Below, in pieces: positions 901 through 64,000 of a stretch of 64,000 nucleotides of DNA. This DNA is from Bugula neritina (taxonomy: Eukaryota > Animalia > Bryozoa). The notes below the pieces were generated by a model. That model ran no database searches. It was not told the DNA's origin and saw nothing but the letters and a program-made list of their open reading frames with translations. Numbering within the stretch: the first letter of the stretch is position 1; the number at the start of each line of letters is the position of its first letter. The position numbers were made by a program, and so were the translations under genes. The DNA lies in assembly GCA_964035545.1 (NCBI GenBank), contig OZ037766.1, positions 23,862,126 through 23,926,125 on the forward strand, in the 5' to 3' direction.

Positions 901-3900
901 ACATAGATGAATGCACTGAACAGACAGACAACTGTGCAACAAATGCAGAATGTACAAACACTGATGGATCATTCCAATGTAAATGTAAGGATGGATACAC
1001 TGGTGATGGAGTCATTTGTGTTGATGGTAAGCTTGATAACTATTATCTAATTACATTATAAACTTTTACAACTGCAGAGCTGTAGCAACAGAAGACTGTA
1101 AATCAGTCTTGTCTAGCTAAATATCTAGAGAATATTGTGAAACTCATTACTCGTTGAGTTTCAGATATAGATGAATGTACTGAACAAATAGACAACTGTG
1201 CAACAAATGCAGAATGTACAAACACTGATGGATCATTCCACTGTAAATGTAAAAATGGATACACTGGTGATGGAGTCACTTGTGTTGGTAGGACTTTAGG
1301 AAAATTTCTTATATCTCTTGCTTTGTGAAATTTTATCAAATGTAGTGCAAGTTGCAGTTGTACGATTGCGACTTGAGATTGCATGGAATGCAAGTGATTT
1401 TTTTCTGTGAGTTATTAAAACATTTTTTACTGCGTAAACTGTTTCTGGATCTCAATAATTCTTTATGTTTGTTGATACAGCGATATATGCTCAAGCACCA
1501 GCTAAGACTACTCAAGCACCTGCCACAACTACTCAAGCACCAGCTAAAACTACTCAAGCACCTGCTCCAATCACTCAAACACGAGCTTCAAGTACTCAAG
1601 CACCAGCTTTACTACATCTCTTGCTTTGTGGAATTTTATCTAGCTAAATATCTAGAGAGTGTTTGTTGTGAAACTCATTACTCATTGAATTTCAGATATA
1701 AATGAATTTATTGAACAGTGAAAAGTAAAAAAACAGACTGGAGTATAGTTCAAGGTTTTTTTTTCAAGTGAATGGTAATAACATAGGAGAAATAAACAAA
1801 TGACGAATAATATATTACGATAGTAAAAGTTTCACCCATATTTCCTTCCCTGTCTTTCTCTTCTATATATAGGATAACCAACCCACAACGGTCACACACA
1901 CCCACCCACACACCCACACACCCACCCACCCACACACATACCCACCCACACACCCACACACCCACCCACCCACACACCCACACACCCACACACCCACACA
2001 CCCACACACCCACACACCCACACACCCACACACCCACACACCCACACACCCACACACCCACACACCCACACACCCACACACCCACACACCCACACACCCA
2101 CACACCCACACACCCACACACACACACACACACACACACACACACACACACAAACACACACACACACACACACACACACATGATATTGTTAAACACAATT
2201 TGTGTGGTGAATTTTTTTACGGTACAATGGTTATGTTAAAGCTTACAAGGAAAATGTGAATGTTGTTTAAAGCAAAAGTTTTGGATTGTTTACATGATTA
2301 AGCTATTTGGCTTGGTTTTTGCTCCATTCTTAGTGAAAGTTTCCACAACTTTGAGTATAGTTACTAATTTGCTTCTTTTTTCCCTCTTCACTAATTGTAC
2401 CAGATGCTAGTATCTCTTGTAGACGGTGAACTGTGTCCAGACCTGACACAAATATGTTCTAAAAATGGCAGATGTGTTAGAGAGTTTGTCAACTTTAAGC
2501 TTGAGTATTACTGTGTGTGTAACTCAGATTATGTTGGTAATGGGACTACTTGTGTAGGTATGTGAACTGAGAGGAGGGACTCTGAATCTTTCCCTTTGGA
2601 ATATTCTAGGATTGTGTTGTGTAAATTGTATTCTATAAGGTAGTCTAGCTATGTGTGCTATGAAAGCTGTAGAATATTTTTTTATCAATAGAAGGTTCTA
2701 ACGTTTATAAAGACTTTTCTTACCTGTTTTGTACTTCACACGACAGTCACTCTCAAACCCAGACAGTTTTACTACACATTGTATATTCAACTTATATAAT
2801 AATTTTCTTACATAATTAAGTAGCTTGATTTTTATTGTAGAAAAAAGTAGTGTTTAGCCATGCTCTTAATCTATGTTTACTCTACACTATTCAACTAACT
2901 TTTAGATGCTGATCTCTGTAAAAGTAACCCTTGTAAAGGAACTGAAAATAGTACTAAATGTATTAACAAGCTTGAGGGAGGATTTATCTGCACCTGTTCT
3001 GCAGGCTACACTGGAAATGGTTTAGATAAACCTTGTGCAGGTGAGCTGCAGCTTGTTTAATTATTTTCATGTTGCATGAAAATGTGTTTCACATACCATT
3101 TTATTGCATAATTTTCACACCTATATAGTATACACAATATGATAAATAATGTTGTTTACTATATTATTATGTATTTCTAGTACCAATATGCTGTTATATA
3201 TTGTGTTTCAGATATCAATGAATGTGATGCTGATAATAGTTGTCTTCCCACTGCAGACTGTATCAATACTATAGGTTCATATGATTGTAAATGTAAAGAT
3301 GGTTACAGAGGAGATGGTCGTGCTCAGTGTAAAGGTTAGCTGCTGTTTAATAATGAGTATTGTCTCCATTTCTATAGTTTATTTACTCTATTAGTAGGTG
3401 ATGGTGGCTTGTAGCCTTAGCTCCAGTTTTCTGCTGAAAAATTTTATTGCATGTTTTAGCCAGTCAGGCTATAAGCATTGTGTACTTATTTTTAACACTT
3501 TTAATTGTTCTCAGGACTCAACTTTATGCATCAAATGCATGCCATCTGCACCTCATAGTTTAGGTTTTAATTTCTTTCAAGTATATGTTATCTACATCTA
3601 TAGATAACATGTATATTATCCGTTGTTTTTCGCGTCAGCTAAGGTCTGATTATAATTCATGTATTCTATACCCTAAATTTACTCTATCCTAAAGTAAATC
3701 TGCCTTGTATAACAATGATCACCGTTGGTCACCTTTCACCGGCGTGTTCCTGCTCAGGTGGCGGGTGCCTTGTATAACAACAATTTCCATTATTACTTGA
3801 TGTTGTATTAGATATAATTGTGTTAAAGTTTAATTGTGCTTGAATTATGTGTTACCCCAGAAAAATATTTTCATGCTGTATTTTTACAGCTGCTCAGACA

Positions 3901-6900
3901 CCAAGTTTTTCCCATTAGTTTGTTGCCCCAAAATTTGAACCTGTATAATCATGAACAGCTGACCTCTAGGTTTATGTACACAACATTCAACTTGCTACTT
4001 GCAAATTCATAATAGTTTTTTTCTTTGTATATATATTCTAGATATAAATGAATGTCAAACTGGAGATTATACCTGTCACCCTCTGGCTACCTGTAAGAAT
4101 ACTGACGGGGCATATACCTGTTTATGTAACAAAGGATACACTGGAGATGGGAAACTCACCTGTTCAGGTAATTGTATTCAGTTATTCTTGTAATTATATG
4201 ACTACATAGAGTCATAAAGTATAGTAACAGGCAACCTAGTCGTCTGCTCTATTATATATGTGGTTATGAGCTATGTAGTAATGCAGCTGGTCATGTTGAG
4301 ATAAAATTAACTGATCCCCTTGCATGTACTCGTGTTTAATTTTAATTATGTGCTGCCATAGCTGTGCTGCTTGTGTCACAGCTATGATGCGCACACTGCT
4401 GTCCAAGCACCTGTTTGATCTAATGGTTGATATTTCTTTATATATATGAAATGAACGGCAATCTGTGTTTGCACTACTCATAAAAACTAATTTTCTTGCT
4501 AAATTTTTTAGATAAGAATGAATGTTTGTTAGGAGAAGATAACTGCCATGTGAATGCAGTCTGTAGTAACACTATTGGTAGTTTCAAATGTGATTGTAAA
4601 CAAGGTTATTGGGGAAATGGTGTAACACAGTGTAAAGGTGACTATTATATTGCCCAACTTCTTTGAAAAAAAAGTTTGTACTAGCTGGCCTGCATTTACG
4701 AAATTTTGAAATTTTAATTTGGAGTCATTGATGGTAATTAAAGAATAAATTGCCTCAAAATTGATTTAAGAATATTGTTCAAAATCTTAGTTCTTGAAAA
4801 ATTCTTTTTACTCAAAAATCTCACAGTGTGTAGTTATTAGCAATACCACTATTTATCTGCAATAAAATTTTGATTACTCACCATTGAATTAAAAATGATG
4901 ACAAAGTATAGTTTAAAGTTTTCTAAAAATACTAATCACAAACCATGAGTAAAGGCAGATTTTTCTAGTAATGGCAGCAAACTTCTATGCCACCAAAACG
5001 CAGGCTGTTTTTATAATCAGAGAGTAAATGCTCTAAATTTTTTGCCACTAACAACATTGTACTCTAAATGTTTACTATTGTTCCATTTTACAACATTTTA
5101 TAATGCAGCACTTTGTTCTGTCACACATTTAGACATCAACCAATTCACATATGATGTTTCAATTCATTGGGGGTTTTAGAGGGAATACTGTGTCCTGACA
5201 ACTCCCTTATTTGCTCCAAGTTTGGAAAATGTGAGTTAACATTTGAAAAAGGACTACAAGTTAAGTGCGCATGTAGATCTGGTTTTAGTGGAAATGGTAC
5301 ATTCTGTGAAGGTGAGATCTGTTTTGGCTCATTGAAGTTTGTTTATTCTTGGACTGTATTATTTTTAGTGCTTCAGGTGTGTAGCTTTTAATACATTTGT
5401 AATAAAATAATTTGATAAATATGTTTTAAATTCTGTCCAAATAGTTTAAAGTTCTGAGTAGTAAGTTCCTGACAGCCTGCCAAAAACTAACTTTAATGGT
5501 TTCAATCTGCAAAGAAATCTAGTGCATCAGACTTACAATGTAATTGTATATCTATAATAAAGGTAGGCCTACTGGCTTTTGTCTCAATTGATGTGAATTG
5601 CCTCTAAATAAAAATATATTTTCTAATACTGAAAATATATAGTTCAATAAAGATAAAGCGGTTGCATATTAAAATTGTTGAAATCCCCACATGAAAACAG
5701 TGTTTCTTTCACATCTAAAAACTTTAGGACATTATAAGAAATGTTATCTGAGTAGCTATACTACAAGATATCAAGAATACTGTTAGCGAAGTGTGATAAA
5801 TAATTTTGATAATTATATAAACGTTTGAAAGGTCAAGCTCATAAAACCCTATAATGCACTATTAAAGAAATGTGCACCTGCAATTTCATGTTGCCTTCAT
5901 TTTCTCTCTTTGAGATTTGCATCTAATTGGAAACTAAAGACCTGTAGAGTAATTTATCATTTTGGGATAAGTTTCAACAAGTTTAAAAATTTCTTTTTCA
6001 TGTATAGTTTTTTTATTTAGTAGGTTTTTACATATTTCAAAGAAAAAACTTTGCTAACCATATTACTATATAGTGCATTATAAATTACAAGTTTACTCCA
6101 GTTAAGTTGTTAGAAATCACATAATAATAGTAAATGGATATTGTATGGGACAAAAATAAAAACTCTTTTATACTTGTACAAAACTTTGCTTTATTTTCAA
6201 GTATATATGTGATAATGTTAATTAAGTATCACAGCCACTATGCAAACACTGCTGATTAAACTATATTGACATTTTCTGACATTTAGCGCTGATTGCTAGT
6301 TATTCTTTATATTGTCAATAGTGTTATGCATAGGTTAGTATCTCTTTGTATATATGCATTGTTTTTTTTCAGAAATAATTTAATTGTTGTTTTTTCTGTA
6401 TTTTTAGATAAAGATGAGTGTCTGCTAGGAGAAGATAACTGCCATGTGAATGCAGTCTGTAATAATACTATTGGTAGTTTCGACTGTACATGTAAGGAAG
6501 GTTATAGTGGAGATGGTGTGACACAGTGTGAAGGTGACTATCTATAAATTGTCAAAATGCTCTGAAATTGAGTGTTTTCACTGGCCTACATTAGTTAAAC
6601 TTTAAGTCACAGTTACAAGTTGCAAATTGTAAGCAATTGATCATATAAACCAAAGCATTGTGTGGTATAAATTTTAAACTAAGTTGTATGCATTACAACA
6701 TTCTTCATTTTTATGCTATAATTTTGTTTAGTATTTTCATGGTACAGCTTCAGTGCAATATATAAATAAAATAACAATCACTTGCTATTATTTTTAATAT
6801 TATAAGTATAATTGAAATATATTAGCTGTAAAAATGGAGGCTAGAGAAAATGTGTTCTAAAAGTTTGATAATCACTTTGTTGTATAAATATAAAACCTCT

Positions 6901-63500: not shown

Positions 63501-64000
63501 GCTTTTTTATTCAGCGTGAAGTTATGACAGGACGTCAACAAGTCATAAATAAATCACTTGTGATGGGCAGTAATTGTTGTTCATTATAATTATCTCAGCT
63601 TGGTAACAAATTGATACCTTATCTATAGTGTTTTAACTCAAATAATGAAGTAAACTTTAAAGCATAGTATAAAAAAGATTTGCAATAAATATTTCTACAT
63701 CTGGTAAACTATTATATATTTAGTATAGCCTTTATTATTGTCCTTTAAAACATATAGTATGCATATAATAATATATTAAATAATTAATAATTTGACTTTG
63801 GTTTCAACAAAACAGCTCTTTATAATCTGTCACAATACTGTTTATTGATAGTTAACTTGGTAAGCAATATACATATTGTATACATAGTATACAAAAGTTA
63901 TTTATAATTGGTTTTTGTAGTTAGAACAGTACTTGATAGACAGGAATACACAGAGTACCACGTATAAAGTTGTTGATGTCAGTTGCTATTCCAACTCTCC
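57577..64000 (+). CDS. Gene F: gene D-type mucin with at least two tandem SEA-like/RQKR modules, 3'-incomplete
   Basis: Exons 57577-57634 (signal), 59640-60436 (phase 1-0), 61832-62428 (phase 0-0, 597 bp), 63921 to beyond 64000. All are open and GT-AG bounded. Confidence 0.82.

What the first reader, a model, noticed from the sequence alone, without database searches (positions are those of the whole stretch)
901..64000. Modular secreted EGF/mucin gene cluster: interchangeable bodies on one conserved C-terminal cassette
Seen: at least six paralogous or chimeric genes in two architectures (pure EGF arrays A and B; mucin +/- SEA-like C to F). Wherever the 3' end is visible, they finish with the same W-EGF + 164-bp terminal exon, and none has a TM segment. 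Known: phase 1-1 EGF exons are class 1-1 shuffling modules. Inference: a lineage-specific, fast-diversifying family of secreted matrix proteins (adhesive, mucus, cuticle or recognition), in which the C-terminal pair is a common binding or polymerisation unit and the EGF rods or O-glycosylated stalks are variable spacers. I do not recognise it as a named family.
Basis: partly seen in the sequence, partly recalled or inferred. Interest (0 to 1): 0.8.

Follow-up and report, generated by a model that had tools for sequence, protein, structure and literature searches.

The report
Bryozoan EGF/mucin genes sharing one tail
A probable bryozoan chromosome carries a tight cluster of genes for secreted proteins, some built only of EGF domains and some with sugar-coated mucin stalks, that all end in the same two-exon EGF tail. 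A sister gene nearby carries the same mucin body on a membrane anchor, so this looks like exon shuffling caught in progress rather than a new kind of protein.

Summary
The window has 44 six-cysteine EGF exons (0.02 expected by chance), almost all phase 1-1. It holds two EGF-array genes (A, B) and four mucin genes (C to F). Each gene ends in a Trp-containing EGF exon plus a 164-bp terminal calcium-binding EGF exon with a conserved 13-residue tail and stop. The genome has only seven copies of each cassette exon, all in this cluster.

New points:
- The cassette comes in two old types (dS saturated, dN/dS 0.09-0.4), while the mucin bodies are young (dS 0.08-0.18).
- A paralogue 138 kb upstream carries the same mucin body and module, but on a transmembrane helix.
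- The "SEA-like" module fails every Pfam SEA test and has a conserved furin-type site.
- A clean 7.9-kb inversion breaks one gene and splits a gene fragment.
- A 200-N gap hides gene A's start.

The non-EGF parts have no relatives among 1.84 billion representative proteins, apart from one metagenome ORF. My reading is a lineage-restricted family of secreted EGF/mucin proteins built by local duplication with breakpoints in introns. It is a new variant of known kinds (PTS+EGF mucin-like proteins, cbEGF arrays). Expression and function are untested.

The parts
901..11003 (+). Gene A: array of 15 EGF exons ending in the type-1 cassette (W-EGF exon about 9879-10001; terminal exon 10840-11003). The 5' end is not visible.
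   Evidence: EGF hits; splice phases; conserved stop; 200-N gap directly left of the window and no EGF exon in the 10 kb upstream
12408..28514 (+). Gene B: candidate signal-peptide exon 12408-12489, then 17 EGF exons (12818 to 28362), ending in the type-1 cassette (W-EGF 27454-27579; terminal 28351-28514)
   Evidence: Paralogous to A exon by exon at 74-90% identity, with the 3-exon block 22382-23925 matching A 2177-3714 in a different position
30091..35126 (+). Gene C: signal exon 30091-30148; short mucin exon 32196-32705; two cbEGF exons (32826-32948, 33425-33547); W-EGF 34002-34127; terminal exon 34963-35126
36697..43658 (+). Gene D: signal exon 36697-36754; long mucin exon 38837-40260, which ends with the first half of the alpha/beta module; exon 41760-42315 (second half of the module, then PTS); type-2 W-EGF (Cys1-Cys6 43019-43117); type-2 terminal exon 43495-43658
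39176..40128 (+). PTS (mucin) tandem repeat of gene D: periods 24/48/120 bp, 59% Thr and 12% Pro. Smaller arrays lie at 32544-32696 (C) and 59979-60293 (F).
41883..41900 (+). Conserved dibasic, furin-type site R-L-R-Q-K-R followed by Ser, in the second half of the module. The basic residues are invariant in all five copies (D, F twice, T, P0001).
   Evidence: alignment A1
47418..48023 (+). Fragment X, 5' piece: copy of gene C 33008-33613 holding one cbEGF exon (47846-47953). The inversion separates it from its W-EGF and terminal exons.
48026..55937 (-). Inverted 7.9-kb block. It holds gene E (signal exon 52852-52795; mucin exon 50776-50387; cbEGF Cys1-Cys6 spans 50255-50148 and 49659-49552; W-EGF Cys1-Cys6 49067-48969; terminal exon truncated at 48181-48026, losing Cys6 and the tail). 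It also holds X's W-EGF (55529-55431) and X's complete terminal exon (Cys1 at 54568, stop at 54418-54416).
55938..55995 (+). Left-behind 3' end (nt 156-213 of the terminal-exon open frame) of gene E's terminal exon. The right inversion junction has a 5-bp overlap.
57577..64000 (+). Gene F (runs past the window end): signal exon 57577-57634; mucin exon 59640-60436; exon 61832-62428 (module second half, PTS, then a second module first half); exon from 63921 on. The type-2 W-EGF and terminal exon lie 1.1-1.8 kb beyond the window (L008:1131-1229 and 1618-1728 plus tail).

Best explanation
This is a locus-restricted family of secreted extracellular glycoproteins in a probable Bugula-type bryozoan.

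Two members (A, B) are rods of 15-17 mostly calcium-binding EGF domains. Four members (C-F) start with a signal peptide and a duplicated ~30-residue N-glycosylated motif. A Thr/Pro-rich stalk, expected to be O-glycosylated, follows. D and F then carry one or two copies of an orphan alpha/beta module with a conserved furin-type site. All six end in the same two-exon cassette: a divergent Trp-containing EGF, then a cbEGF with a 13-residue aromatic tail.

The family was assembled by tandem segmental duplication, unequal exchange and inversion, with breakpoints in phase-1 introns or in the PTS repeat. As a result the same young mucin body now sits on three different 3' ends: a type-1 cassette, an anciently diverged type-2 cassette, and, in paralogue T 138 kb away, a transmembrane anchor.

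Shown here: the anatomy, copy numbers, selection pattern, breakpoints and absence of outside relatives.

Inferred: secretion, O-glycosylation, convertase cleavage, and the idea that the cassette is a shared non-covalent docking unit that fixes variable spacers to a common matrix or cell-surface partner.
For: Anatomy:
- 44 EGF exons, with phase 1-1 splice sites.
- Pfam EGF, EGF_3 and EGF_CA hits.
- The terminal exon is a canonical cbEGF; its best PDB matches are ADGRE5/CD97, NELL, Notch, fibrillin and uromodulin.

Cassette:
- The cassette exons occur seven times each, only in this cluster.
- Cassette dN/dS is 0.09-0.4. Type 1 versus type 2 has dS above 1.8 or saturated, yet the Cys pattern, tail length and stop are kept.

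Mucin bodies and paralogue T:
- Mucin N-terminal and module exons show dS 0.08-0.18 among C, D, E, F and T.
- T has the same module exon running into a Cys stalk and a TM helix (Kyte-Doolittle mean 2.02).
- The TM form recurs in a metagenome ORF, with a nearly identical stalk and TM region.

Duplication:
- A ~6.5-kb duplication unit runs from the intron before the W-EGF exon into the next gene's PTS repeat, at 91% identity including non-coding DNA.

Secretion:
- The candidate signal exon is 98.0% identical among the four copies, against 90-93% in its flanks.
- Gene B has its own signal exon.
- AATAAA lies 12-58 nt after each stop.
- The PTS composition is mucin-like, and the RxKR site is invariant.
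Against: - No RNA or protein evidence was available, so splice joins, signal peptides and expression are predictions.
- The mucin bodies evolve almost neutrally (dN/dS 0.4-1.06).
- Two copies are structurally broken (E and X), so part of the cluster may be decaying.
- The young age of the mucin bodies could reflect gene conversion rather than recent shuffling.
- The docking role of the cassette has no direct support. The W-EGF has no PDB sequence match and falls just under Pfam's EGF_3 cut-off.
- The fold of the module is unknown. The AF2 model of its second half has pLDDT 43.5.
- The organism's identity comes from earlier AI notes and was not checked here.
Confidence: 0.66

Rival explanations
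1. The shared cassette is only a by-product of where recent duplication units begin and end. Most mucin copies (C, E, X, perhaps F) are young, functionless duplicates or pseudogenes. Only the EGF-array genes and the membrane mucin T are real working genes.
For: - 83-94% identity runs through introns and intergenic DNA.
- X lacks any 5' part, and E lost Cys6 and the tail.
- dN/dS of the mucin bodies is 0.4-1.06.
- The donor of the short mucin exon in C and E is weak (GTTCTG).
Against: - All 44 EGF exons keep six Cys, open frames and splice sites.
- Cassette dN/dS is about 0.1 even between young copies (B-C 0.10, D-F 0.15).
- D and F carry an old type-2 cassette found on no EGF-array gene, so a mucin-plus-cassette gene is not just a fresh accident.
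- The signal exon is better conserved than its flanks.
Confidence: 0.2
2. Assembly artefact: haplotypic or collapsed-repeat sequence was laid out as tandem copies and one 7.9-kb piece was mis-oriented, so the real locus has fewer genes.
For: - A 200-N scaffold gap abuts the window.
- The inversion is perfectly reciprocal. Flipping 48026-55937 would restore E's terminal exon and rejoin X's exons on one strand.
- C and E bodies are 94% identical.
Against: - Copies differ by 6-17% and by PTS length and exon content, which seems too much for alleles (my judgement).
- There are no Ns inside the window.
- The junctions show 2 bp of filler and a 5-bp overlap, as in real breaks.
- An independent metagenome source also shows distinct mucin and TM forms.
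Confidence: 0.08
3. The window genes are membrane-tethered after all, like paralogue T, through undetected downstream exons or a lipid anchor, making them ordinary transmembrane-mucin-like genes.
For: - The closest paralogue is membrane-anchored.
- Known PTS+EGF proteins such as MUC13 and HEG are transmembrane (PMC1552070).
Against: - The terminal exon lacks the phase-1 donor and has a stop at the same codon in both old cassette types.
- The 13-residue tail is not hydrophobic.
- T's stalk and TM segment has no second copy in the genome at E<=0.1.
- A polyA signal follows the stop closely.
Confidence: 0.05

Closest known systems
MUC13-type transmembrane mucins (PTS + SEA + EGF + TM), as defined in Lang, Hansson and Samuelsson 2006 (PMC1552070)
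   Same: - A signal peptide and a large single-exon Thr/Pro-rich repeat domain.
- A small globular module between the stalk and the C-terminal part that carries a proteolytic site.
- EGF domains near the C-terminus.
- One family member (T) has a single-pass TM anchor right after the module.
   Different: - No Pfam SEA match at any threshold tried.
- The cleavage site is a dibasic convertase motif, not the G/SVVV autoproteolytic motif.
- The window genes have no TM segment or cytoplasmic tail.
- In T there is no EGF between the module and the membrane.
- There is no sequence homology outside the EGF domains.
HEG / HEG1 (PTS + EGF + TM, no SEA), neighbour of MUC13 (PMC1552070)
   Same: A PTS stalk followed by a few EGF or cbEGF domains, as in genes C and E. 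It also lies in a locus shared with a related mucin gene.
   Different: HEG is membrane-anchored with a conserved cytoplasmic tail. C and E end in a soluble 13-residue tail. Homology beyond the generic EGF domains was not tested here.
Secreted cbEGF-array matrix proteins (fibrillin/fibulin-type arrays, sea-urchin fibropellins; from my own knowledge)
   Same: Genes A and B are signal peptide plus tandem cbEGF domains, each on a phase 1-1 exon. The PDB matches of the terminal cbEGF include fibrillin, Notch, NELL, uromodulin and CD97.
   Different: - None of the other hallmark domains (TB/8-Cys, fibulin-type C-terminal module, avidin-like domain) turned up in the window's long ORFs or in the few exon pieces scanned against Pfam. 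A and B were not scanned systematically.
- A and B end in the cluster-specific W-EGF + cbEGF + tail cassette, which is found nowhere else in this genome.
IMPG1/SPACR-type secreted proteoglycans (SEA, mucin-like region, C-terminal EGF; from my own knowledge, not tested)
   Same: A secreted protein that combines an O-glycosylated region, a small alpha/beta module and a C-terminal EGF-like domain. In layout it is the nearest analogue to D and F.
   Different: IMPG proteins have bona fide SEA domains and are conserved in vertebrates. Here the SEA test fails and the family is confined to one locus.

Membership tests
EGF-like / calcium-binding EGF domain (Pfam PF00008, PF07645, PF12947) | Six cysteines in the C-x-C-x-C-x-C-x-C-x-C spacing, with a significant profile match | tested here: met
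   44 units against 0.02 in shuffles. The sampled exons pass EGF, EGF_3 or EGF_CA cut-offs. The W-EGF scores 26.4 bits for EGF_3, just under the 28.5 cut-off.
EGF-like / calcium-binding EGF domain (Pfam PF00008, PF07645, PF12947) | Calcium-binding consensus (D/N-x-D/N-E/Q-C start and the Asx-hydroxylation motif) | tested here: met
   29 of 44 have the N-terminal motif. 20 of 44 have C-x-[DN]-x4-[FY]-x-C-x-C. The remainder, including the W-EGF, are not of the calcium-binding type.
Class 1-1 exon-shuffling modules | Each domain lies on its own exon, flanked by phase-1 introns | tested here: met
   The acceptor lies 11 nt before Cys1 and the donor 4 nt after Cys6 in nearly all exons. The terminal exons lack the donor.
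Mucins (criteria of PMC1552070) | At least one PTS domain | tested here: met
   58-60% Thr and 12% Pro, in tandem repeats of 24/48/120 bp, in C, D, E, F and T
Mucins (criteria of PMC1552070) | A VWD or SEA domain recognised by the Pfam model | tested here: not met
   PF01390 hits 11 places in the genome at E<=10, none of them in the window or in T. hmmscan of the module's exon pieces at E<=10 gives no SEA or VWD. The spliced, joined module was not searched.
SEA-type transmembrane mucins | A single-pass TM helix and a cytoplasmic tail after the juxtamembrane module | tested here: not met
   No window exon piece exceeds a Kyte-Doolittle mean of 1.49. The stop after the 13-residue tail is conserved. 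Only paralogue T, outside the window, has a TM helix.
SEA-type transmembrane mucins | SEA fold (beta-alpha-beta-beta-alpha-beta) with an autoproteolytic G/SVVV site | tested here: inconclusive
No G/SVVV motif is visible in the sequence; a dibasic RxKR site is there instead. AF2 of the second half alone gives hairpin, helices and a strand at pLDDT 43.5, too poor for a fold search.
Gel-forming mucins | VWD/C8/TIL assemblies and a C-terminal cystine knot for disulfide polymerisation | tested here: not met
   The mucin and module exon pieces scanned gave no such Pfam hit. All Cys lie in six-Cys EGF units or in the four-Cys module, so none is left over for intermolecular bonds (sequence reading). 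The ORFs were not scanned exhaustively.

The most novel reading that the evidence does not exclude
The locus is a natural switchboard. One mucin body has moved within roughly the last 0.1-0.15 synonymous substitutions per site onto three alternative 3' ends: a membrane anchor and two anciently separated EGF docking cassettes. The animal can thereby present the same glycan stalk either tethered to the cell or deposited in a matrix. On this reading the cassette with its aromatic tail is a dedicated, undescribed docking or sorting unit, and the furin-cleaved orphan module is a functional analogue of SEA that arose independently.
Probability: 0.3. Interest if true: 0.55.

Novelty: new variant of a known kind. 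Interest (0 to 1): 0.4.

Why it matters
Exon shuffling of phase 1-1 EGF modules is textbook, but it is usually inferred from old, finished products. Here the intermediates can still be read:
- duplication units whose ends lie in introns and in a PTS repeat;
- a chimeric gene type (C, E);
- a stranded gene fragment (X);
- an inversion with base-level junctions;
- the same mucin body on a membrane anchor and on two secreted tails.

This gives a compact test case for how membrane-bound and secreted mucin-like proteins interconvert. It also points to a small conserved C-terminal unit whose partner could be sought. For bryozoan biology, the genes are candidates for mucus, cuticle or larval adhesive components. 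The parts themselves (cbEGF arrays, PTS stalks) are ordinary, and nothing is known about expression, so the interest is moderate.

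Tried and rejected
- Pfam on the mucin N-terminal domain, both module halves and T's exon gave nothing but noise (BSMAP and NMO at E about 0.02).
- A six-frame genome search with Pfam SEA found canonical SEA exons elsewhere but none here.
- The ESM Atlas feature search on the module gave no usable hit.
- The word search with F's 218-aa exon returned only two JGI metagenome ORFs, P0001 and P0002.
- The full HMMER pass with T's exon returned P0001 plus P0003. 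I reject P0003 as a low-complexity Ser/Thr plus TM match to a fungal-looking protein.
- AF2 of the module's second half with five paralogues gave pLDDT 43.5, so I ran no fold search.
- The metagenome scan with the terminal exon returned only generic EGF matches at 45-73% identity over part of the query, with no cassette orthologue.
- The PDB sequence search with the W-EGF found nothing.
- The C/D/E/F signal exon was sought upstream of T and not found. T's 5' end remains undefined.
All searches were exon by exon, so the whole module and the two-exon cassette were never tested as single units.
- A literature search for Bugula, mucin and EGF found nothing relevant.

Full report
**What is there.** The window is AT-rich (27-37% GC per 2-kb window) animal DNA. 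It is G000:C2:23862126-23926125 of a 216-Mb assembly. Earlier notes of this scan call the organism a Bugula-type bryozoan; I did not verify that, and it is not human. A six-cysteine EGF pattern finds 44 open units, against 0.02 expected from shuffles. Pfam confirms EGF, EGF_3 and EGF_CA on the sampled exons. 29 of 44 carry the cbEGF N-terminal motif and 20 of 44 the Asx-hydroxylation consensus. Nearly every unit is one exon, with an acceptor 11 nt before Cys1 and a donor 4 nt after Cys6, that is phase 1-1.

**Gene content.**
- Gene A (901-11003) has 15 EGF exons. Its 5' end is hidden, because a 200-N gap lies directly left of the window and no EGF exon lies in the 10 kb beyond it.
- Gene B (12408-28514) has a good candidate signal exon (12408-12489) and 17 EGF exons.
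- Genes C (30091-35126) and E (minus strand) have a 58-bp signal exon, a short mucin exon, two cbEGF exons and the cassette.
- Gene D (36697-43658) has the signal exon and a 1.4-kb mucin exon (59% Thr, 12% Pro). That exon ends in the first half of a small module. The next exon carries the module's second half plus more PTS, and the cassette follows.
- Gene F (from 57577) has two such modules and ends about 1.8 kb past the window.
- The signal exon is 98.0% identical among C, D, E and F, against 90-93% for its flanks.

**The cassette.**
- The W-EGF exon is 126 bp in type 1 (for example 34002-34127).
- The terminal exon (164 bp, for example 34963-35126) lacks the phase-1 donor. It runs 13 codons to a stop that sits at the same position in all copies.
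- AATAAA lies 12-58 nt downstream of each stop.
- Genome-wide, both exons occur seven times each and only in this cluster.
- There are two types: type 1 in A, B, C, X and E, and type 2 in D and F. The types are about 56% identical in protein, with dS above 1.8 or saturated but dN about 0.3 (dN/dS 0.09-0.16).
- Within types, dN/dS is 0.09-0.4. The cassette is therefore old and constrained.
- The terminal domain is a standard cbEGF; its best PDB matches are CD97/ADGRE5, NELL, Notch, fibrillin and uromodulin.
- The W-EGF is divergent, with no PDB match and an EGF_3 score just under the cut-off.

**The mucin bodies and a membrane-bound sister.**
- The mucin N-terminal exon occurs five times in the genome, and the module's second-half exon four times.
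- The extra copy of each belongs to gene T, 138 kb upstream on the minus strand.
- T has a 2.4-kb mucin exon (open frame 809 aa) and the same module. In T, however, the module exon runs on into a two-Cys stalk, a 23-residue hydrophobic helix (Kyte-Doolittle mean 2.02) and a basic stop-transfer stretch, followed by a phase-1 donor.
- That stalk and TM segment is unique in the genome.
- A JGI metagenome ORF (P0001) has the same layout. Its stalk and TM region is almost identical to T's, while its module is about 78% identical.
- Among C, D, E, F and T the mucin and module exons differ by only dS 0.08-0.18, with dN/dS 0.4-1.06.
- So a young (or homogenised) mucin body sits on three different 3' ends, two of which are anciently diverged cassettes.

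**How the cluster was built.**
- Self-comparison shows a ~6.5-kb unit: 27333-32697 matches 33879-39329 at 91%, including introns and intergenic DNA. It starts in the intron before the W-EGF exon of one gene and ends in the PTS repeat of the next. Genes such as C are therefore chimeras of a mucin 5' half and an EGF-array-type 3' end.
- A 1.5-kb block of three EGF exons (2177-3714 and 22382-23925, 90%) sits at different positions in A and B.
- A clean reciprocal inversion of 48026-55937 has 2 bp of filler on the left and a 5-bp overlap on the right. It cut E's terminal exon after Cys5, losing Cys6 and the tail; the remainder lies at 55938-55995 on the + strand. It also separated fragment X's cbEGF exon (47846) from X's own W-EGF and terminal exons. 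X has no 5' part at all.

**The "SEA-like" module.**
- By eye the joined module could be beta-alpha-beta-beta-alpha-beta.
- The Pfam SEA model hits canonical SEA exons elsewhere in this genome but nothing here at E<=10.
- hmmscan of each exon piece finds no SEA.
- The Atlas gave nothing.
- AF2 of the second half alone is unreliable (pLDDT 43.5).
- The module has four Cys and an invariant R-x-[KR]-R site followed by Ser, and no G/SVVV motif.

**Relatives elsewhere.**
- The word search and the full HMMER pass over 1.84 billion representatives found only P0001 and P0002, plus one low-complexity false hit.
- The metagenome scan with the terminal exon found only generic EGF domains.
- The family is not a named family.
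- In layout it is closest to PTS+EGF proteins such as MUC13 and HEG (PMC1552070) and to cbEGF-array matrix proteins. It fails the SEA/VWD criterion for mucins proper and, inside the window, the TM criterion.

**Mechanism (inferred).**
- The products are secreted. The PTS stalks are O-glycosylated spacers and the EGF arrays are calcium-stiffened rods.
- A proprotein convertase probably cuts the module in the secretory pathway. This would be a functional parallel to SEA cleavage.
- The constrained cassette with its aromatic tail most likely docks these varied bodies non-covalently onto one partner.
- Disulfide polymerisation is unlikely, because no cysteine is left unpaired.
- Rivals are neutral duplicate debris, assembly artefact and hidden membrane anchorage. 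They are weighed in their own sections.

**Verdict.** The finding is a new variant of known kinds. It is of moderate interest, mainly as a readable case of exon shuffling and of switching between membrane-bound and secreted forms. Expression is untested.

Noticed in passing
L009:7497-8078 (-) and L011, = G000:C2:23723496-23728961: Gene T is a membrane-anchored paralogue of the window's mucin genes: an 809-aa open mucin exon, the same orphan module, then a Cys stalk, TM helix and basic stretch. Its 5' exon and cytoplasmic-tail exons were not found.
   Followed up: partly
   Followed up: partly
G000:C2:23679110-23705355 (+) and C2:23742636-23767785 (-); also C8:12.95-13.16 Mb, C4:23.03-23.10 Mb, C3:13.52 Mb: Further dense arrays of EGF exons, some spaced only about 230-290 bp apart on the minus strand. 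They flank gene T and make the whole 250-kb region an EGF-exon hot spot. None carries the W-EGF and terminal-exon cassette.
   Followed up: no
window 2177-3714 and 22382-23925: A 1.5-kb block with three EGF exons is 90% identical between genes A and B but sits at different positions in the two arrays. Each copy has a microsatellite nearby: (CACACCCA)n at 1893-2177 abuts the A copy, and (TA)n at 21393-21677 lies about 700 bp upstream of the B copy.
   Followed up: partly
window 15321-15516, 21196-21394, 46659-46865: A dispersed repeat of about 200 bp (78-83% identity, both orientations) lies in introns and intergenic DNA. It may be a small mobile element.
   Followed up: no
window 12947-13094, 28854-29001, 35447-35598, 53936-54085 (-), 56337-56486: A 150-bp block is conserved at about 75% downstream of every type-1 terminal exon. 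After gene A it is displaced by a 1.6-kb insert that holds gene B's signal exon and first EGF exon. Its function is unknown.
   Followed up: no
window 38839-39180 and paralogues (32198-, 59642-, 50774- on the minus strand): The mucin proteins start with two copies of a ~30-residue motif (LLxLLK-x-VSV-x-VNETG-x-DVTVPL), each with an N-glycosylation sequon. It has no Pfam match and no relatives outside this family.
   Followed up: partly
L008:3991-4230 (-), about 4 kb beyond the window end: An ORF that looks like part of a mitochondrial-carrier (SLC25-type) gene marks the right-hand end of the cluster.
   Followed up: no
P0001, P0002 (JGI metagenome contigs of 1.8 and 2.4 kb): These are the only outside relatives. 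They resemble T and the E/F mucin exons at 75-84% identity, presumably bryozoan DNA from a related species or strain in an environmental sample.
   Followed up: partly
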